A DNA stretch of 54,494 bases from Octopus sinensis. Lineage: Eukaryota. Position numbers and translations under genes: made by a program. The notes under the pieces are model-generated. The model was not told where the DNA came from, searched no databases, and was given only the letters and a program-made list of their open reading frames with translations. The stretch spans positions 1-54,494 of the forward strand of contig NW_021835879.1 in the NCBI RefSeq assembly GCF_006345805.1. Direction: 5' to 3'. Below, one piece after another: positions 1-41,382 of this stretch. Every line of letters starts with the position of its first letter. Position 1 is the stretch's first letter.

Positions 1-975
1 TTCAACTTCACTAGAATGTTCCTCGTGTCATTCAGTAACAACTTTAGCTGTGGGAATTGGTGCATTATCATCCTGAAAGATTGCGTCTCCCTTTGGAAAC
101 AGTTCCACAACCATAGGATGAATTTGATCAGATAAAATGTTTAAATATTCTTGACTATTAATTCTGCCATGAAGGAAAACCTTTGGGCCGATGGATTTCC
201 AAAATATAGCCCACCCCCCGCCCCAGATCATCACAGATCCTCCTCCATGTTTAACAGTTGGAAGAAGGCAGTCAGGATCAAATGCTTCTTTTGGCTGTAT
301 CCACACGTATACTTAGCCAGTGGTTGGAAATAGGGTAAAGGATGACTCGTCTGAGCATTCTTCCACTGTGCTAGGGATCAATTCGGTAAGTTTTTACTCC
401 ACTCTAAATGGTTTGTAACGTTTGTTTTTGAAAATACTGGTTTTCTGATTGCAGCCCTCCGTGAAATCTGTTTTTGTGCAGCTCCTAGCAAACAGTTTTT
501 GTGGAAACTGGGTTCTCGAGATGGTCATATTAAACCCTGCAGTAATTTTGGGAGCTATACTTTTGTGATCCTTTCTAACAATTCGCACAAGAGTCCGACG
601 GTCCTTATCTGAAAGTTTTGGAATTTTTCCGGAATTTTGGTTGGACGAAGAGGTTTTTCCCTCTTTCTCAACGGCTGTCCGTACTTTCGAGACTGTACTT
701 CTTGATACACCAAGCATTTCGGCTATTTTCGTTATACTAGCGCCAGCTATTCGAGCACCAACAATGTGATCTCTTTGAAAGTCCGATGGATCTGTCGTTT
801 AATGAATTTTTCTGATGACATCTGAAAAGAAACAGCAATTTTAACAAAATATATTAAGCAACACAAATAATAAATCAAAAAACATAAAAATTAACAAGCT
901 CTTGACAGTTTTATAGATATTCTGAAATTATGATGCTATGATGCTAGCTGTTTCCATTATTTTGTCCAACCCCTG
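1..975 (-). mobile_element. Decayed Tc1-family DNA transposon (5' TIR, HTH and DDE transposase fragments; 3' end lies beyond the window start)
   Basis: Minus-strand translation gives SDFQRDHIVGARIAGASITKIAEMLGVSRSTVSKV (paired-like HTH, ~790-690) and PTVKHGGGSVMIWG...IFQDDNAPIPTAK (DDE core, ORF 28-306), broken by frameshifts. A TIR-like CAGGGGTTGGACAAAATAATGGAAAC occupies ~950-975 next to TA-rich flank. Confidence 0.92.
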
Positions 976-5546: not shown

Positions 5547-5590
5547 TACATACATACATACATACATACATACATACATGCATACATACA

Positions 5591-5708
5591 TACGGCCATA
5601 TCACGCTGAATGCACCGGTTCTCGTCCGATCACCGAAGTTAAGCAACGTCAACCATAAGTGAGTATTTCGATGGGTGACCGATTGGAAAACCTAGGTGTT
5701 GTAAACAT
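5591..5708 (+). pseudogene. 5S rRNA-derived sequence (pseudogene or SINE3-like head)
   Basis: TACGGCCATATCACGCTGAATGCACCGGTTCTCGTCCGATCACCGAAGTTAAGCAACGTC matches the invertebrate 5S 5' half including box A. GATGGGTGACCG is box C-like and the 3' end reads GGTGTTGTAAAC. The first 3 nt are replaced by (CATA)n, the 3' half is diverged, and there is no oligo-T terminator. Confidence 0.9.
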
Positions 5709-6414: not shown

Positions 6415-6960
6415 TGGGGAGCTGGCAGAATCGTTAGCACGCCGGGTGCGTCTGTCGCTACGTTCTGAGTTCAAATTCCGCCGAGGTCGACTTTGCCTTT
6501 CATCCTTTCAGGGTCGATAAATTAAGTACCAGTTACGCATTGGGGTCGATGTAATCGACTTAATCCCTTTGTCTGTCCTTGTTTGTCCTCTCTTTGTTTA
6601 GCCCATTGTGAGTAGTAATGAAATAGGTATTCCGTCTGTCGCTACGTTCTGAGTTCAAATTCTGCCGAGGTCGACTTTGCCTTTCATCCTTTCGGGGTCG
6701 ATTAAATAAGTACCAGTTATGCACTGATGTCCATGTATGACTTAATCCCTTTGTCTGTCCTTGTTTGTTCACTCTATGTTTAGCCCCTTATGGGTAGTAA
6801 AGAAATAGGTATTTCATCTGCCGCTACCTTCTGAGTTCAAATTCCGCTGAGGTCAACTTTGCCTTTCAGCCTTTCGGGGTCGTTAAATTAAATACCAGTA
6901 ACGTACTGGGGTTGATCTGATCCAAAATTTCGGGCCTTGTGCCCAGAATAGAAAAGATTA
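6415..6960 (+). mobile_element. Tandem array of three SINE family A units (~183-bp period)
   Basis: The unit (g/a)tctg(t/c)cgctac(g/c)ttctgagttcaaatt recurs at 6450, 6634 and 6816. Confidence 0.92.
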
Positions 6961-7253
6961 ATTTTATCGGTTTCCATCTATCGAAACGACTGGCGTTACC
7001 TCTTGTGTCTTTCATATGTATTTTGCTTTCTTATTGTATTTTTTGTTTTTGTATGTAATCTACGTTGTTAAGTCAGTATTTATATCCAACTCGTGCGCAA
7101 TCCTCGAATTTAATAAACCACCCTCTGATAGCGAAATCTGATAAATTTCCTTCAGTGTGACACGAGAGGAATATGGGTAGGGATATACATAAATATAGAC
7201 CATCCAAAGTGAGAATGAGAGGGAAAGGGGGATAAAGTGAGAAAGAGATAGAT

Positions 7254-11789: not shown

Positions 11790-13070
11790 ATCTGACTTCT
11801 TCTTCTCCTTCTCCTTCTCCTTCTTCTTCTTCTTCTTCTTCTTCTTCTTCTTCTTTCTTCTTCTTCTTCTTCTTCTTCTTCTTCTCCTCCTCCTTCTCCT
11901 CCTCCTCCTCCTTCTTCTTCTTCTTCTTCTTCTTCTTCTTTTTCTTCTTCTTCTTCTTTTTCTTCTTCTTCTCCTCCTCCTCCTCCTTCTTCTTCTTGTT
12001 CTTCTTGTTCTTGTTCTTGTTCTTCTTTTTCTTCTTCTTGTTCTTGTTCTTGTTCTTGTTCTTCTCTTCTTGTTCTTCTCCTTCTTCTTCTTCTCCTTCT
12101 TCTTCTTCTTCTCCTTCTCCTTCTCCTTCTCCTTCTTCTCCTTCTTCTTCTTCTTCTTCTTCTTCTTCTTTTCTTCTCCTTCTCCTTCTTCTTCTTCTTC
12201 TTCTTCTTCTTCTCCTTCTCCTTCTTCTTCTTCTTCTTGTTCTTGTTCTTGTTCTTCTTCTCTTCTTGTTCTTGTGCTTCTCCTTCTTCTCCTCTTCTCC
12301 TTCTTCCTCTTCTTCTTCTTCTTCTTCTCCTTCTCCTTCTCCTTCTTCTTCTCCTTCTTCTTCTTCTTCTTCTTCTTGTTCTTCTTCTCCTTCTTCTTCT
12401 TCTTCTTCTTGTTCTTCTTCTCTTCTTGTTCTTCTCCTCCTTCTTCTCCATCTTCTCCTTCTTTTTCTTCTTCTTCTTCTTCCCTCCTTCTTCTCCTCCT
12501 CCTCCTCCTCCTCTTTCTTCTCCTTCTTCTTCTTTTTCTTCTTCTCCTCCTCCTCCTCCTCCTTCTTCTTCTTGTTCTTCTTGTTCTTGTTCTTCTTTTT
12601 CTTGTTCTTCTTTTTCTTCTTGTTCTTGTTCTTCTTCTCCTTCTTCTCTTCTTCTTCTTCTCCTTCTTCTCCTTCTTCTCCTTCTTCTTCTTCTTCTTCT
12701 CCTTCTCCTTCTCCTTCTCCTTCTTCTCCTTCTTCTCCTTCTTCTTCTTCTCCTTCTTCTTCTTCTCCTTCTCTTCTTGTTCTTGTTCTTGTTATTGTTC
12801 TTCTTCTTCTCCTTCTTCTCCTTCTTCTTCTCCTTCTTCTTCTTCTTCTTCTGCTTCTCCTTCTCCTTCCTTCTTCTTCTTCTTCTTCTTCCTTCTTCTT
12901 CTTGTTCTTCTTCTTCTTCTTCTCTTCTTGTTGTTCTCCTCCTTCTTCTCCTCCTCCTCCTTCTTCTTGTTCTTCTTGTTCTTGTTCTTGTTCTTGTTCT
13001 TTTTCTTCTTGTTCTTTTTCTTCTTCTTCTCCTCCTCCTCCTTCTCCTCTTCTTCCTCTTCTTCTTCTTG
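11790..13070. repeat. ~1.28-kb degenerate (CTT)n/(GAA)n polypyrimidine-polypurine tract
   Basis: Plus strand is almost only C/T with interspersed TTG triplets. The 222-454 aa ORFs here are artefacts. Confidence 0.97.
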
Positions 13071-30590: not shown

Positions 30591-31057
30591 TTATGTATGT
30601 ATATATATATATGTGTGTGTGTATATGTGAGTGTGTATGTATGTTTATATGTATGTGTGTGCGTGTGTAAGCATATATATATACAAATGCACATCAGGGT
30701 ATTTGTAAAAACAATCATAATGAAAAGGGTGTAAAATAACGGTTGCATATTATATGATTTACAGATCTGAAAACCAACAAACCAAAACAATGCTGAAAGG
30801 AAGCAATTCCAAAATACGAAGAATTTAGTAAAAGGCGTCGGCTACGAAATATTTTTAGATTCTTTCAATTTATTTTTAAAATCAAAATAATGCATTCTTT
30901 CGTCTTAGAAGTTGGTTTGCAAGCTTCCTTGAAGTGAACTCGTGTGACCCTCTCGAGATACAGTATAATACAACCTGATACATTCATGCCGAATAGCAAC
31001 TCCATTTCAGACGATGACATATATTCATATATACATGCATACATATATATAAATGGG

Positions 31058-31092
<35 letters not shown>

Positions 31093-31105
31093 CATATATA
31101 TATAC

Positions 31106-31166
<61 letters not shown>

Positions 31167-31544
31167 TACATATATATATATGTGCATGTATATATATATA
31201 TATACATATATGTATATATATGTATATATAAATAAAATATCTATACATATATCTATCTACATATGTACATACACACACACGTATGCATGTACATATGCAC
31301 ACACGCGGACACACACACACACACACACACACGCGCGCGGACACACACACACACACACTCACATACGCATATTTTCATGATGTGGGAATATTCAAGATTC
31401 AATATTCCCGTTCATTTATTCTTTGTAGACATTGGTAAAAGTCGCAAAGAATTCCTGTAGCACTCTCAATGCCTCGATGAGACGAACTGAAAGGCGTTGT
31501 GTCGTTGGTTACCTGGCCTTGATGAATCGTCTGATCCGAGCACC

Positions 31545-31685
31545 AAAGAAGAAAACTAATTGGCCGCCCGGAACATCCGAAATATGTACCAGTATGGAAG
31601 ATTGGTGCAGCTACTTCAAGAATTTGACCACTACTGACTGAGTATTCTGGGACTTAGTGAAATGTGCTGGAAGGGTTAAAGGTGC
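31545..31685 (+). mobile_element. RTE-type LINE endonuclease N-terminal fragment
   Basis: RNIRNMYQYGRLVQLLQEFDHY*LSILGLSEMCWKG resembles the WNVRTMY...ILGLSExRW motif of RTE APE domains. Confidence 0.72.
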
Positions 31686-32738
31686 CTTGTCGTGTCTGCG
31701 CTTGTACTCTTTCTGCGCTTGTACTTTTCTACGCCTGTACTGTTTCTGCGTAAGGCTACCACGAGCGCTAATGATATGAGTCATGGTTTTGACTTTTCTC
31801 CCACACATTCCACGGATGTTCATTGCACTTGTGTGCTATATATTTGTTTTCTCTGGGATGATATTCAATGCCTGGCCCTGGGCAACGATGATGAAACTTT
31901 CAGCCCCCTTTTAAAGGTCACCTTTTCTAAGCTATATCCATGAAACTTCATAATCTTTTAAGTTGTTAGTTTCGCGTCGGACTGACATGTAATTCCAAAT
32001 GGAGCAGTGTTTGTTCTCTCGTCGGCTATTCGTGATTGGAATTCATCAGAACACTCAAGTCGAATTTTGGTAAATCCTTCTGCGTTGGCAGGCCTTGTTC
32101 GCTGTTTACCAGATATTTCTTCTCTCACCGCCGATGCACTCCTCTACGCTTATCCAACTTCGTCTACCTTTACTCCTCTTCAAGTACATCCAAGGGGAGA
32201 GAGTACCATGTGTTGTCCTCAGCTCTCGGGTTGTGCGTTTCAGTTGGTCAATCTCCGCTCGCGTCCATTTCAGAATGGGTCTATTAAAACGAACAGCAGC
32301 AACAACCCCTATATTGATAGCAACCACAAGAAGATTGCGGGGCTTGAAACATGCAGCAATGACCTTGTCTTTCACTTCTCTGTGCAAGATATTGTCCAGC
32401 TCCAGGCTCTCACATTATGATACTTGTAGCCATCATCATCTCGGTCTCCCATGTGCTTTGCATTTGGCAATTCTCTGCCCTTGCAATCTGTTCTTTTCCC
32501 CCGTTTCAAAGTGAGCACAGCACACTTTGAGATTCCGAATTCCTCTTCTGTGTCCTTGTTGCACATCTGTACATTCTCACTCAGTCTTTCCACTTCAGTT
32601 TCTGTTTTGCTAACAATTTTAATAATCCATGATAAGATAGGTGAGACGAGGTTCATTCTGCCACGACTCGAGAGCGCGTAAACTTTGCATACAGCTACAG
32701 AAAGTAGGCTATAACAAATAGCAAAGGTGAACAACAAT
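31686..32738 (-). mobile_element. R4/Dong-clade non-LTR retrotransposon fragment B (RT domain 4 to zinc knuckle), decayed
   Basis: Minus strand: SPLLFVIA; SKTETEVERL..EFGISKCAVLTLKRGK..LP..GYKY; AINIGVVAAVRF..ILKWTRAEIDQL; YLKRSKGRRSWISVEEC; AESFIIVAQGQAL; MCGRKVKTMTHIIS; YKRRHDK. An internal ~18-bp tandem triplication lies at ~31695-31750. Confidence 0.88.
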
Positions 32739-32752
32739 CTATTATTATTGTA

Positions 32753-33829
32753 ATTGAGTGAGAGAGCAAAGAAGCTCATTCTATGCATTCCCAGATTACA
32801 CACGCAAATTCACAGGTAAAATATGTATTTAAAAATTAATAAATAAATAAATTCATGAATGGATGTTGTTTTCACAGCGATAATGCTCTTCTCAGTACAT
32901 GAGTCGTTCCAGTTAACACCCTGTTAACACCCCTGTAGGGATGGTAAACCTGGTATCCTTTGCAAATAGGTTTTAGTACCTTTTTTTAAATCATTCCTAG
33001 AGATCCTACAATCACTGATACTGTAGTCGCCTTGAGATGCCACATTTTTTCAATTTCTATTAGCAAGTCTTTATATTTACTGATCTTGTCAAATTCTTTC
33101 GTCGTTATATTCGCAAGAATACTCATGTCAATTAGTAAACACATATTTTTTTGTCTGATCTTTTATAATAATATCCGGCTTATTAGCTTTTATAATTTTG
33201 TCGCTATGTAAGGGGGAGTCCCATAGAATCGACACATTTTCTCCCTCAGTCACAGCTTAAGGATGGTGTTTATACCATTTGTCAGCGGTTTTGATTTTAT
33301 AATGTCGACATATTGTCCAATGTAAATACTGACCGACTCTGTCATGTCTTGCTTTATATTCTGCAGGTGCTAAGACTCTACATCCTGAGATTAGGAGGTC
33401 TATAGTTTCAATTTCATCATTACAGAATCGGCATTTTGGGTCAGCTCCATTTTTTTTATCACATTGGCTTAGTAGTTCCGGGTTAATAAGCTTTGGTCTT
33501 GAGCAGCTAATATGAAACCTTCACTCTCTGCTTTTAACCCTGAGCTTCGTAACCATTGGTGCAGGTGTTTCTGGTCGACATCAGCTTGTTTGCTACGGGC
33601 CACATACTTGCCATGCAGAGGTTACTGTTCCCATCTGTTAGCTAATTTTTCATGTGCTTTAGTCTTTGCAATTAATTTCATTTTCTTGGCAGCATCAGTT
33701 GGCGCATTTCCTTCAGCCTCATTAATCTGGAAGGTATCTAAGAGATCAGTAGCGAATTTTTTGCTCTCTTTCAGAATAGATTGAAATTTTTTCGGTCTTT
33801 TATGTTTTTTAGCAAGTTTTAGCATCTTT
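32753..33829 (-). mobile_element. R4/Dong-clade non-LTR retrotransposon fragment A: 5'-truncated 3' end with zinc knuckle, restriction-like endonuclease, 3' UTR and (AAT) tail
   Basis: Minus strand: PLHGKY..HQWLRSSGLKAESEGFILAAQDQSL; CRFCNDEIETIDLLISGC (H to L); EYKARHDRVGQYLHWTIC; ANKPDIIIKD..LIDMS..KEFDKISKYKDL..EKMWHLK. Stop at 32872-32874 and a ~120-nt 3' UTR; (AAT)n on both sides. Confidence 0.93.
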
Positions 33830-33848
33830 ATTATTATTATTATTATTA

Positions 33849-33910
<62 letters not shown>
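33830..33910. repeat. (ATT)n/(TAA)n microsatellite between stacked insertions
   Basis: Direct reading. Confidence 0.97.
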
Positions 33911-33913
<3 letters not shown>

Positions 33914-34425
33914 GAGTGAGAGAGCAGTTCATGCCATCAAAGTGACACTGGGATAAAATATACGAAGCCCACTATACCCATCATGACTACCCGTCTGATA
34001 AGGGTACACCAGGCACATGCACCTCAACCATTTGTGCGCGACATAGTGATCTCATATCAAGATAAACAGCGCATGACCTTGCAGGTGGGGCCCAGTTACA
34101 ATTTTCTTCTGGTCGAGTAACCCACCCTGCTCAAAAGGTCCTTGAATAAGGATTGTTTAAAGATGTTGAACGAACCAGCCATGTTTCCAAAGGTGAATTA
34201 TCCAAACCTCTAAGAATTCCTCTCAACACACGGCTATGATGCTCCCCCACTACTTCTGCTCGTGATCAGAGATGCACATATCGTCAGCCACTAAGGGACA
34301 TGCTCAACTGGTTACGGTCAAACAACTGACAAGCAAATCTGTGGTATTGAGCAGAATATTTGCTGTAGCCCATCTTTTATACCAAGACAAAACAATGTAC
34401 ATGATAACACTTCCAATCACTTAAG
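33911..34425 (-). mobile_element. ~510-bp apparently non-coding element embedded in (TAA)n, sharing its 3' terminus with fragment A
   Basis: Flanked on both sides by (ATT)n. Plus-strand start ATTGAGTGAGAGAGCA is identical to 32753-32768. No ORF in the track. Confidence 0.75.
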
Positions 34426-34523
34426 ATTATATATTATTATTATTATTATATATTATTATTATTATTACTATTATTATTATTTTTATCATATTATTATTAT
34501 CATTATTATTATTATTATCATCA

Positions 34524-34554
<31 letters not shown>

Positions 34555-34707
34555 CTACTATTATTATTATTATTATTATTATTATATTATTATTATTTTA
34601 TTATTATTCTTATTATTAGTAGTATTAGTATTATTATTATCATTATTATTATTATTATTATTATTATATTATTATTATTACTATTATTTTATTATTATTA
34701 TTATTAT

Positions 34708-34744
<37 letters not shown>

Positions 34745-34745
34745 C

Positions 34746-34785
<40 letters not shown>

Positions 34786-34852
34786 CTATTATTATTATTA
34801 TTATTATTATATTATTATTATTATATCATATTATTATTATTATTTTATATTA

Positions 34853-34886
<34 letters not shown>

Positions 34887-34888
34887 CA

Positions 34889-34920
<32 letters not shown>

Positions 34921-35232
34921 CATTATTATTATTTATTATTAATTATATCATATATTATTATTTTATTATTATTATTATCATTATATTATTATTATTATTA
35001 TGTATTATTATTAGTATACTATTATTATTATTATTATTATTATCATATTATTATGATTATTATTATTATTATTATCATTATTATTATTATTATTAATTAT
35101 TATTATTATCATTATTATTATTATTATTATTCTTATTATTATTATTATTATTATATATTATCATCATTATTATTATATTATTATTATTATTATTATTATT
35201 ATTATCATTATATATTATTATTATTATTATCA

Positions 35233-35271
<39 letters not shown>

Positions 35272-35430
35272 TATTACTATTATTGATTATTATATATCAT
35301 TATTTTATTATTATTATTATTATTATTATTACTTATTATTTATTATTATTAAATCATTATTATATTATTATTATTATTATGAAATCATCATCATTATATT
35401 ATTATTATTATTATTTTATTATTATTATTA
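34426..35430. repeat. ~1-kb degenerate (ATT)n array
   Basis: Direct reading; poly-I/Y/L ORFs are artefacts. Confidence 0.97.
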
Positions 35431-35834
35431 TTCTCTCGCCAGAGTTACCCTTTCTTTTAATTCTTTTTCTCATAGTCGTAGTACTGGTCGTCATCACCAT
35501 CCTCTTCGGTGCCATTGTCTGTCTGTCTCTTCCACCACCTCCTCATCTCCTCCTCCTCCTCCTCCACCCACCTCATCATCATCATCTCTGTCTTCGGTTT
35601 TTCCATTATTCCCACCGTCGTCATTGTTGTTGTTTACGACGTCGTATTTTGCATCACCATCATCACCATGCCTTATGGCATATTGTGTTTGCATAACGAA
35701 GAACCTCGTCCCTACAAATCTAAATCATGTTTGCAGACCAGCCCCGGGAGTGCGTCTAATATGCAAATCGGTATATCCAACAACTTGACACCACTGTATG
35801 TGGTGGCTGTATAAGCAATGTGTTCGGAGGTAAT

Positions 35835-40191: not shown

Positions 40192-41382
40192 TTGGGTTGG
40201 GAACTAAGTTCTATCCGTTTTGTAAATTTAAATTTTTTAAAAGGTTTAATAAAAAATAACAACTAATTAATCAATAATGTTTTCCCCTTGTTGTTTAAAA
40301 CTTCTCAACGTTCAACAAGATTTTCAGTACCTCATTGGTAGAAATGACCCGAGTTTGACTCGAAACATTGATGCTACCAAGCTCTCAATTCTGCATCAGT
40401 ATTGAACGAAACTCCGCGCATAGCATTTGAAAGAGATCAAAGAAGTGGAAATCCGTTGGTGCCAAATCAGGAGAGTACGGCGGGTGTGGCAGCACTTCCC
40501 AGCCATGCGTTTGAATGGGTTCCTTGGCCATATTGGCGTTGTCGCGCAGCAGAAGAGCTCCATGCTGCATTATAGGCGTTTTCTCTTGAATAGTCGTGTT
40601 GAGTCGTTCCATCTGTTGAATAGAGTTCCGCGTTGATCGATTGGTTCCGTTCAAGCAATTCGTAATGGAAAATCCCTTCGCAGTCCCACCATACGCACAA
40701 CATCGCTTTACGCGGATGAAGATCTTGTTTCACGCGCCGTGTCGCTTGTTTACCGGGGCTAAGCCATTGCTTACGCTGCTTCATGTTGATGTACAGGCAC
40801 CATTTTCCGTCGCCACTAACGATTTGGTAAGGAAATCGTTGCTTGTGTCCATGAGTTGAGCGGTGACGAGCAAGCAAACCAGCGGAGATTGTGGCTCATT
40901 GATTTTTGTTGTTGTTGTCACTTAAAGCATGCGGAACCTATGCTCAATACATCTGAACTGTTCCCATCTAGGGAAGATGCTTCGCTATAGCAGTTCCCTT
41001 TTTGCTTGACGAGAATTTTCGTGCAAAAGATGGTTTAATCGCTCTTCATTAAACTGAACTGGACGGTCAGAACGAGGTGCGTTTTTGAGGTCAAAATTGA
41101 GGTCCATTTTTGAACTTGGCATACCCATCACGAGCGGTTCTTTCAGCTATGGCACCCTCTTCATACACAGCACAAATATCGCAAGCAGCTTTTGCGGCGT
41201 TACAATCTTGATTAAAAGCAAAAAGAAGGAGGTGTCGAAAATGGTCGTTTTTCTTAACTTGACATTCCATTTTAATGATCTGAAAATAAAAAATAACTAA
41301 AATTAATTAGAAAAAACACCCAAAGAAACAAAAACAAAGTAGATTCCAGAATTAAAAAAAACGGGGGGATCTAGTTGCCAAC

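What the first reader, a model, noticed from the sequence alone, without database searches (positions are those of the whole stretch)
33911..34425. Non-coding 510-bp element sharing an exact 16-nt 3' terminus with the Dong-like LINE: candidate non-autonomous partner
Seen: the LINE 3' end (32753-32768) and this element (33911-33926) are identical over ATTGAGTGAGAGAGCA (sense ...TGCTCTCTCACTCAAT plus (AAT)n) and then diverge. Both sense ends can form a small hairpin just upstream (GAGC-TTCTTT-GCTC and GGCA-TGAAC-TGCT). I see no Pol III A/B boxes and no ORF. Established: SINEs borrow LINE machinery through shared 3' ends. Inference: a TAA-targeted, SINE-like partner of an RLE-type LINE. Such pairs are uncommon compared with APE-LINE/SINE pairs.
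Basis: partly seen in the sequence, partly recalled or inferred. Interest (0 to 1): 0.8.

Follow-up and report, generated by a model that had tools for sequence, protein, structure and literature searches.

The report
Octopus retroposon borrowing a Dong-LINE tail
The 515-bp non-coding stretch is one copy of a repeated, roughly 0.56-kb octopus retroposon that sits in TAA microsatellites and ends in the same 16 bases as a neighbouring Dong-like LINE, so it most likely spreads using that LINE's enzymes, a pairing I did not find described for this LINE clade.

Summary
ATTGAGTGAGAGAGCA occurs only at 32753 and 33911, each time at a junction with a TAA array, and nothing else is shared between the two elements. 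Both lie on the minus strand.

The LINE (33830→32753) is a 5'-truncated, frameshifted R2-superfamily LINE with a CCHC finger and a PD-(D/E)xK nuclease. Its relatives in a coral and in two metagenome contigs also end in (TAA)n, so it is Dong-like.

Element X (34425→33911) is not unique sequence. In about 100 kb of Octopus bimaculoides and O. sinensis DNA I found four more insertions (about 557, 206, 151 and 44 nt). All keep the same 3' end plus (AAT)n, are cut back from the 5' side, and are 87-93% identical (the 44-nt remnant is lower). Three sites are shared by both species.

No copy has an ORF or any similarity to LINE protein. The two longest copies abut TAA at their 5' ends. X has no tRNA, 5S or 7SL head and carries internal T4 runs, so it is not a classical Pol III SINE.

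Weak points: only one LINE copy shows the tail, only two copies define the 5' end, the proposed hairpins are no better than chance, and mobilisation in trans is inferred.

The parts
33911..34425 (-). Element X, window copy: non-coding retroposon, sense strand is the minus strand, 3' end at 33911. Probably lacks about 40 nt of the family's 5' end.
   Evidence: The nhmmer profile of the family aligns profile positions 36-557 to 34431-33913.
33911..33926 (-). 3'-terminal motif of X, sense ...TGCTCTCTCACTCAAT, identical to the LINE terminus.
   Evidence: Conserved in copies B and E, one substitution in C, 4-nt deletion in A.
33828..33910 (.). (TAA)n spacer of about 28 units between the 3' end of X and the 5'-truncated end of the LINE fragment.
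34426..35432 (.). About 1-kb impure (TAA)n array abutting the 5' end of X: the microsatellite in which X and the LINE sit.
32753..33830 (-). 5'-truncated, frameshifted Dong-like RLE LINE copy. It has the linker, CCHC finger and PD-(D/E)xK nuclease region (about 33825-32875), then a 3' UTR of about 120 nt.
   Evidence: Relatives match R2 proteins by sequence and by fold.
32753..32768 (-). 3'-terminal motif of the LINE, identical to that of X, followed on the sense strand by TACAATAATAATAG.
32740..32752 (.). Short TAA remnant between the LINE 3' end and the next, older LINE fragment.
31641..32739 (-). Older, strongly decayed RT-to-CCHC fragment of a distantly related LINE. It starts at the TAA remnant and is context, not the partner.
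   Evidence: 24-33% aa identity to P0115 residues 125-501.

Best explanation
X is a member of a dispersed, non-coding, non-autonomous retroposon family of Octopus. The unit is about 557 nt. It is copied into TAA microsatellites by target-primed reverse transcription, using the protein of a Dong-like (R2-superfamily, restriction-like-endonuclease) LINE.

Proposed cycle. An X master copy is transcribed, probably by Pol II or by read-through, since X has no Pol III head and carries internal T4 runs. The RNA ends in ...UGCUCUCUCACUCAAU(AAU)n, the same terminus as the LINE's own RNA. The LINE protein takes this RNA in trans. Its nuclease nicks a (TAA)n/(TTA)n duplex, and the (UAA)n tail pairs with the nicked strand and primes reverse transcription. 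Reverse transcription often stops early, which gives 5'-truncated copies. Each insertion leaves or extends a TAA array.

Shown here: the shared terminus; the multicopy state; the nested 5'-truncation series with a constant 3' end; the TAA association of X, of the LINE and of the LINE's relatives; the RLE-type architecture of the LINE; and the lack of coding capacity or LINE-protein similarity in X.

Inferred: that this LINE subfamily, and not another, supplies the protein; that the 13-16-nt terminus plus the repeat is the recognition signal; and how X is transcribed.
For: The identical 16-nt terminus sits at TAA junctions and only there.

A six-frame protein search with X hit one gene model, O. 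bimaculoides A0A0L8FVA6, whose first 43 aa are an antisense ORF of an X copy. The locus fetched through its cluster member and the neighbouring locus hold these copies:
- A, about 557 nt, L001:17343-17895.
- B, 206 nt, L001:9745-9951.
- C, 44 nt, L001:19357-19399.
- E, 151 nt, L003:5016-5166.
- D, an older internal fragment.

All copies end in TGCTCTCTC(AC)TCAAT(AAT)n. About 5 of 13 (AAT)n>=5 arrays in the octopus DNA held are directly preceded by this end. Copies are 87-93% identical, apart from the 44-nt remnant C at 74-86%. A, C and D are at orthologous sites in O. sinensis, so the family was active before that split.

The 5' flank of A is GATAATAATAAA, and the 5' flank of the window copy is a 1-kb TAA array. 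LINE proteins show no similarity in X or its flanks.

The LINE is RLE-type. phmmer matches R2 proteins at E 7e-32. CCHC, PD, D and K columns are invariant in 19 relatives. An AF2 model (pLDDT 78) matches R2 structures with probability 1.0, then PD-(D/E)xK endonucleases.

Relatives end in (TAA)n after 3' UTRs of 87-170 nt: L002, and L005 and the full-length Oculina copy L006 flanked by TAA on both sides.

Literature: Dong elements target TAA repeats, including in a snail (PMC3812793). Dong-R4 LINEs are abundant and recently active in Octopus (PMC8967140, PMC13282606, PMC9115989).
Against: Only one LINE copy with this terminus was seen. A closely related LINE (L002, 75% nt) ends differently, so the tail of the partner subfamily is not established from a consensus.

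Only two X copies reach the 5' region and they differ by about 42 nt, so the 5' boundary rests on n=2.

The shared tail is very short (13 unique nt) compared with the tens of nt usual for LINE/SINE pairs. No conserved or unusually stable structure was found near it.

Three truncated copies have unique sequence, not TAA, at their 5' side.

No promoter, no transcript evidence and no clean empty site were obtained. The copy-number estimate comes from only about 125 kb, part of which was chosen because it holds X.
Confidence: 0.7

Rival explanations
1. X is not an element of its own. It is the long 3' UTR of a second Dong subfamily, and every copy seen is a 5'-truncated LINE copy cut inside that UTR.
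For: 5' truncation is frequent in this LINE clade, as in the L005 array of truncated copies. Only two X copies reach the 5' region and their ends differ by 42 nt. X has no recognisable head.
Against: 3' UTRs in this clade are about 87-170 nt in four elements from four sources, against about 557 nt for X. Truncated LINE copies of 250-430 nt in L005 all still show coding similarity, whereas X shows none. The longest X copy is preceded by a TAA remnant and the next longest by a TAA array. Two of five copies end within 42 nt of each other.
Confidence: 0.1
2. X is an internally deleted (bipartite, SIDE-like) derivative of the octopus Dong LINE. Its body would come from the LINE's 5' UTR or 5' ORF region and only its last 16 nt from the 3' end. 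This is a variant of the main explanation that differs on origin and on how X is transcribed (LINE promoter or 5' processing signal).
For: R2, the best-studied RLE LINE, produces such SIDEs (PMC3414825). Molluscan short retroposons with LINE-derived 5' ends (LP-SINEs) are described (PMC4758252). The window LINE copy is 5'-truncated, so its 5' part could not be compared with X.
Against: The full-length coral relative has a 5' UTR of only about 145 nt, and its N-terminal 544-codon region shows no similarity to X. No HDV-like ribozyme or other Rfam family is found in X. No octopus LINE 5' end was within reach, so this remains untested.
Confidence: 0.15
3. The match is chance, or X is ordinary unique sequence next to an extremely truncated (16-nt) LINE insertion, or it is a one-off chimeric retrocopy of a host RNA made by template switching.
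For: The unanchored BLAST E-value of a 16-mer in 54 kb is only about 0.02-0.05. R2-type reverse transcriptases are known to switch templates (general knowledge).
Against: The same body-plus-terminus junction recurs in four other insertions with different truncation points and different flanks, in two species. A repeatedly copied master element is therefore required.
Confidence: 0.02

Closest known systems
[quoted passage not shown]
   Same: A short non-coding element shares the 3' terminus and the terminal simple repeat with an autonomous LINE in the same genome. It is multicopy and shows LINE-type 5' truncation.
   Different: The partner here is an RLE (R2-superfamily, Dong-like) LINE that targets a microsatellite, not an APE LINE. 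The shared tail is only 13-16 nt. There is no Pol III-derived head and no supported stem-loop.
R2 SIDEs: short internally deleted, non-autonomous derivatives of R2 (Eickbush and Eickbush 2012, PMC3414825)
   Same: They are non-autonomous parasites of an RLE LINE that keep the LINE's target specificity and its 3' end.
   Different: SIDEs keep the R2 5' ribozyme and a long 3' UTR and live in 28S rDNA at low copy number. X shares only 16 nt, has no detectable ribozyme, lives in TAA microsatellites, and appears abundant.
Dong of Bombyx mori and DongAg/DongBg (Xiong and Eickbush 1993; Kojima and Fujiwara 2004, as summarised in PMC3812793); 'Dong-R4' LINEs of cephalopods (PMC8967140, PMC13282606, PMC9115989)
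   Same: The LINE beside X has the RLE architecture and the (TAA)n association that define Dong. Such LINEs are already known to be abundant in Octopus.
   Different: These reports concern the autonomous LINE. I found no description of a non-autonomous partner. Kojima 2018 (PMC5786205) lists only RTE, Ingi, Vingi and R2 as clades with bipartite non-autonomous derivatives.
LP-SINEs of gastropods and bivalves (Matetovici et al. 2016, PMC4758252) and other 'headless' SINE-like families
   Same: They are short molluscan retroposons without a tRNA head that still amplify with a LINE-type tail.
   Different: The LP-SINE head is demonstrably LINE 5' UTR-derived and the partner LINE is unidentified. 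For X the partner is visible and the origin of the head is unknown.
Octopus tRNA-derived SINEs (OK, OR1, OR2; Ohshima and Okada 1994, cited in PMC4758252)
   Same: Same host genome and high copy number. Their (ATT)n tails form the same TAA/TTA duplex that X uses.
   Different: They are unrelated in sequence to X and have a tRNA head. Their sense-strand tail is (ATT)n, not (AAT)n. In two cases X lies tail-to-tail against such a SINE.

Membership tests
Dong / R4-clade RLE LINE (applies to the neighbouring LINE, 32753-33830) | Reverse transcriptase followed by a C-terminal CCHC finger and a PD-(D/E)xK restriction-like endonuclease | tested here: met
   The window fragment encodes C-x2-C-x7-(H)-x4-C, RHD, KPD...D...K (the position aligned to the finger's H reads L in this decayed copy), with frameshifts. 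In 19 relatives the C190, C193, H202, C207, P275, D276, D291 and K307/K310 columns are invariant. Relatives hit R2 proteins by phmmer at E 7e-32. The AF2 model matches R2 structures, then PD-(D/E)xK endonucleases.
Dong / R4-clade RLE LINE (applies to the neighbouring LINE, 32753-33830) | Insertion in (TAA)n microsatellites with the 3' end joined to TAA repeats | tested here: met
   The window copy is flanked by TAA on both sides. L002, L005 and L006 all end in (TAA)n, and L006 is full-length between two TAA arrays.
Dong / R4-clade RLE LINE (applies to the neighbouring LINE, 32753-33830) | Phylogenetic placement of the RT with Dong/R4 reference elements rather than with R2, NeSL, CRE or Hero | not testable with these tools
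   No Dong/R4 reference sequences are in the libraries to hand. The PDB holds only R2. 'Dong-like' therefore rests on architecture plus target.
Canonical SINE (Pol III-transcribed, small-RNA-derived head) | 5' head derived from tRNA, 5S rRNA, 7SL or snRNA, with internal A/B-box promoter | tested here: not met
   ARAGORN finds none. Rfam in E-value mode finds nothing in the window copy or in the longest copy. There are no convincing A/B boxes in the consensus.
Canonical SINE (Pol III-transcribed, small-RNA-derived head) | No Pol III terminator (T>=4) inside the unit | tested here: not met
   The consensus sense strand has four T4 runs, at positions 41, 75, 80 and 332.
Canonical SINE (Pol III-transcribed, small-RNA-derived head) | Short (under about 700 nt), non-coding, dispersed and multicopy | tested here: met
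   The unit is about 557 nt. There are five insertions plus one fragment in about 125 kb. There is no ORF above 50 aa.
Non-autonomous partner of a stringent-type LINE (common-tail rule) | 3' terminus and terminal repeat identical to those of a LINE in the same genome | tested here: met
   16/16 nt plus (AAT)n. This rests on a single LINE copy.
Non-autonomous partner of a stringent-type LINE (common-tail rule) | Same insertion preference and the TPRT hallmarks (constant 3' end, variable 5' truncation) | tested here: met
   Lengths are about 557, 515, 206, 151 and 44 nt, all with the same 3' end followed by (AAT)n.
Non-autonomous partner of a stringent-type LINE (common-tail rule) | Mobilised in trans by the LINE protein, dependent on the tail | not testable with these tools
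   This needs a retrotransposition or in vitro TPRT assay.
SIDE / bipartite internally deleted LINE | 5' part homologous to the 5' end of the parent LINE | not testable with these tools
   No full-length octopus Dong copy could be fetched. The coral relative's 5' UTR (about 145 nt) and N-terminal region show no similarity to X, but the species are too distant for that to decide.
SIDE / bipartite internally deleted LINE | 3' part is a substantial piece of the parent 3' UTR | tested here: not met
   Only the last 16 nt are shared. The rest of X is no more similar to the LINE 3' UTR than shuffled sequence.

The most novel reading that the evidence does not exclude
X is the first documented non-autonomous partner family of a Dong/R4-clade (RLE, microsatellite-targeting) LINE. 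It would be present at some 10^4-10^5 copies in Octopus genomes and recognised through a terminal signal as short as about 13 nt plus (UAA)n. It would account for a large share of the genome's TAA microsatellites, including arrays seeded on the (ATT)n tails of the abundant octopus SINEs.
Probability: 0.35. Interest if true: 0.6.

Novelty: new variant of a known kind. Interest (0 to 1): 0.5.

Why it matters
LINE/SINE partnerships by a common tail are textbook for APE-type LINEs. For RLE-type LINEs, the only described parasites I found are the low-copy R2 SIDEs.

A high-copy, headless partner of a Dong-like LINE would show three things. Microsatellite-targeting RLE LINEs can also support trans-mobilisation on a genomic scale. 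The RNA signal they need may be defined by a very short terminal motif, which is of interest because R2-type proteins are being developed as insertion tools. And such elements would contribute to the extreme microsatellite load and the large 'unclassified SINE' fraction reported for octopus genomes (PMC13282606).

On the practical side, copies of X contaminate gene models. A0A0L8FVA6 begins with 43 residues read from the antisense strand of an X copy.

Tried and rejected
1. Chance match or unique sequence: rejected by the multicopy truncation series.
2. Hidden coding remnant in X: tblastn with ten LINE proteins and with the coral N-terminal region found nothing.
3. Small-RNA head or 5' ribozyme: Rfam and ARAGORN were negative on the window copy and on the longest copy. 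Rfam on the coral LINE 5' UTR gave only a spurious AAU-repeat hit.
4. Conserved 3' hairpin: RNAfold z-scores were -0.8 to +0.2.
5. Whole-element structure: z was -2.9 for copy A but -1.2 for the window copy, which is inconclusive.
6. Clean empty site for copy B in O. sinensis: the region is rearranged by SINE and MITE-like insertions, so it cannot be used.
7. Octopus full-length LINE: two protein searches returned relatives from shrimp, corals, hydrozoans and metagenomes but no named octopus protein. The supplements of Petrosino et al. hold no sequence.
8. More octopus DNA: exact-pattern scans of JGI metagenomes (twice), GTDB genomes and IMG/VR found nothing. The representative-library search with P0001 gave only one further cephalopod locus.
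9. Literature searches for a Dong/R4 SINE or non-autonomous partner returned nothing relevant. This is absence in an open-access library only. Repbase and Dfam could not be consulted.

Full report
**What is at the coordinates.**
- The window is octopus-type DNA. It is extremely rich in microsatellites, carries the abundant octopus SINE, and holds elements that are about 90% identical to Octopus bimaculoides sequence.
- ATTGAGTGAGAGAGCA occurs only at 32753-32768 and 33911-33926.
- On the + strand each copy is preceded by an ATT run. The elements therefore lie on the minus strand, and their sense 3' ends read ...TGCTCTCTCACTCAAT followed by (AAT)n.
- Read 5' to 3' on the minus strand, the region is:
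  - a 1-kb (TAA)n array, 35432-34426;
  - element X, 34425-33911;
  - (TAA)28;
  - a LINE fragment, 33830-32753;
  - a short TAA remnant;
  - an older, decayed LINE fragment, 32739 to about 31641.
- Three of the 16 bases belong to the repeat. The remaining 13 are identical in the same register at two microsatellite junctions, which chance does not explain.
- Beyond those bases X and the LINE share nothing above shuffled controls.

**The LINE.**
- The fragment 33830-32753 translates, with two frameshifts and several stops, into the linker, a CCHC finger (its histidine position reads L in this copy), an RHD motif, KPD...D...K, and the C-terminal helices of a LINE protein. A 3' UTR of about 120 nt follows.
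- Relatives are widespread in invertebrates: shrimp, hydrozoan, corals and many metagenome contigs.
- A 711-aa relative matches solved R2 proteins from the RT through the CCHC finger at E 7e-32.
- In 19 relatives the CCHC, PD, D and K columns are invariant.
- An AlphaFold model of the C-terminal 377 residues (pLDDT 78) finds R2 structures first, with probability 1.0. PD-(D/E)xK cap-snatching endonucleases come next.
- The LINE is therefore an R2-superfamily, restriction-like-endonuclease LINE.
- Its relatives share the target:
  - a 75%-identical element on a sewage-metagenome contig ends in (AAT)n;
  - a full-length copy in the coral Oculina patagonica lies between two TAA arrays;
  - one metagenome locus is a tandem series of 5'-truncated copies separated by TAA arrays.
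- This is the behaviour published for Dong (PMC3812793). 'Dong-R4' LINEs are reported as abundant and recently active in Octopus (PMC8967140, PMC13282606, PMC9115989).
- I could not place the RT in a tree with Dong/R4 references, so 'Dong-like' rests on architecture and target.

**Element X is a repeat family.**
- X has no ORF longer than 50 aa.
- A search with its six reading frames joined into one query hit a single protein, O. bimaculoides A0A0L8FVA6. Its first 43 residues are an antisense ORF of X.
- Through a RefSeq member of that cluster I fetched the locus (L001) and then the adjoining one (L003). Together they cover about 70 kb of chromosome CM046623.1.
- These loci hold four more insertions:
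  - copy A, about 557 nt;
  - copy B, 206 nt;
  - copy E, 151 nt;
  - copy C, 44 nt;
  - plus an older internal fragment, D.
- A profile search found no further copies.
- All four insertions keep the same 3' end followed by (AAT)n and differ only in how far they extend 5'. That is the signature of target-primed reverse transcription.
- About five of the thirteen (AAT)n>=5 arrays in the octopus DNA I hold are directly preceded by this end.
- Pairwise identity is 87-93%, apart from the 44-nt remnant C at 74-86%.
- The orthologous O. sinensis locus (L004) carries A, C and D at the same sites. A is broken there by a SINE and has lost its tail. The family was therefore active before these species split.
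- Copy B was not found in O. sinensis, but that site is rearranged and gives no clean empty site.
- Leaving out the two copies through which the regions were chosen, the density is about one per 30-40 kb. That extrapolates to roughly 10^4-10^5 copies per genome. This figure is my own extrapolation from very little sequence.

**Is X just a LINE 3' UTR?**
- Ten LINE proteins give tblastn hits only at 31641-33825 in the window and at one unrelated LINE fragment in L003. None falls in X or its flanks.
- 3' UTRs in this clade measure about 87, 88, 120 and 170 nt.
- Truncated LINE copies of 250-430 nt in L005 still show coding similarity. X has about 557 non-coding nt.
- The longest copy, A, starts with TGCCCTGATGCAG... 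directly after GATAATAATAAA. The window copy starts about 40 nt further in, directly after the 1-kb TAA array.
- The window copy is thus probably slightly 5'-truncated. A discrete unit of about 557 nt is likely, but that rests on two copies.

**What X is not.**
- It has no tRNA, 5S, 7SL or snRNA head and no ribozyme detectable by Rfam or ARAGORN.
- It has no convincing A/B boxes, and four T4 runs in the sense strand.
- It is therefore not a classical Pol III SINE.
The 3' regions fold no better than shuffles.
- Whole-element folding is inconclusive.
- Whether the X body derives from the 5' part of the octopus LINE (a SIDE-like or LP-SINE-like origin) could not be tested. No full-length octopus copy was within reach, and the coral relative gives no similarity.

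**Mechanism.**
- The best reading is a headless, non-autonomous partner of the Dong-like LINE.
- Its RNA carries the LINE's terminal 13-16 nt plus (UAA)n.
- The LINE protein takes this RNA and copies it into nicked TAA/TTA duplexes, with frequent 5' truncation.
- Copies B and E lie tail-to-tail against the (ATT)n tails of octopus SINE copies of different subfamilies. This suggests that SINE tails are among the TAA targets used.
- Shown: the shared terminus, copy number, truncation series, TAA association, LINE type and absence of coding capacity.
- Inferred: the identity of the protein donor, the recognition signal and the mode of transcription.
- The weakest link is that only one LINE copy shows this terminus, while a close relative ends differently.

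**Comparison and novelty.**
- Functionally this is the common-tail rule of LINE/SINE pairs, and among RLE LINEs it resembles R2 SIDEs (PMC3414825).
- It differs from these in partner clade, in target (a microsatellite), in the very short shared tail, in the lack of a head and in apparent abundance.
- Kojima (2018, PMC5786205) lists only RTE, Ingi, Vingi and R2 as clades with non-autonomous bipartite derivatives.
- My searches of the open-access library found no Dong/R4 partner.
- Repbase, Dfam and the octopus repeat libraries could not be consulted. There the family may already sit among 'unknown' or 'unclassified SINE' entries (893 such families in O. vulgaris, PMC13282606).
- I therefore rate it a new variant of a known kind, of moderate interest.

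Noticed in passing
window 5588-5707 (+), continuing to about 5865: A full-length 5S rRNA match (76 bits) is fused directly to sequence that looks by eye like the body of the octopus SINE. It is flanked by (ACAT)n and (AC)n. It looks like a 5S-headed SINE copy rather than a 5S gene.
   Followed up: partly
L001:9600-9745 and L003:5164-5340: X copies B and E lie tail-to-tail against octopus SINE copies of different subfamilies. The SINE's own (ATT)n tail and X's (AAT)n tail form one array. A SINE at L001:19000-19140 has the same (ATT)7 tail without X. SINE tails may be a major target reservoir for the TAA-specific elements.
   Followed up: partly
L001:9745-9951 (X copy B) and protein P0001: The 2015 gene model A0A0L8FVA6 starts with 43 residues read from the antisense strand of X copy B. 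The current RefSeq model XP_014786617.2 has a different first exon. This is a repeat-derived annotation artefact or an exonisation.
   Followed up: partly
window 31641-32739 (-): A second, much older RT-to-CCHC LINE fragment (24-33% aa identity to the Dong-like relatives) begins exactly at the TAA remnant. It loses similarity about 280 bp before a (CA)n/(TA)n block (31019-31358). It is possibly another microsatellite-associated RLE LINE.
   Followed up: no
L005 (ENA ERZ25066843, ctg3152), whole 8.1-kb locus: This is a tandem series of at least six 5'-truncated Dong-like LINE copies of several subfamilies. Each has a different 3' terminus and each is separated from the next by a TAA array. It illustrates stacking of target-specific insertions in one microsatellite.
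   Followed up: partly
window 11796-13069 and 34426-35432: Very long trinucleotide arrays: (CTT)n of about 427 units and (ATT)n of about 339 units.
   Followed up: no
window 6451-6912: There are 2.5 tandem copies of a 182-bp unit made of octopus SINE sequence. A SINE-derived tandem repeat.
   Followed up: no
window 40467-40877 (-) and 28-717 (-): A mariner transposase remnant (Pfam Transposase_1, E 6e-21). A Tc1-like remnant is also seen by eye only; Pfam gives no hit for it.
   Followed up: partly
L004 about 6900-7230 (O. sinensis): An insertion of about 330 bp with long terminal inverted repeats (MITE-like) is absent from the orthologous O. bimaculoides site (alignment A2).
   Followed up: no
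L001:28404-28559 and L004:24788-24943: Fragment D is an older piece corresponding to X profile positions about 98-270, without a tail. It lies in an intron at orthologous sites in both species. It could be a decayed X copy or a relic of the sequence from which the X body arose.
   Followed up: no
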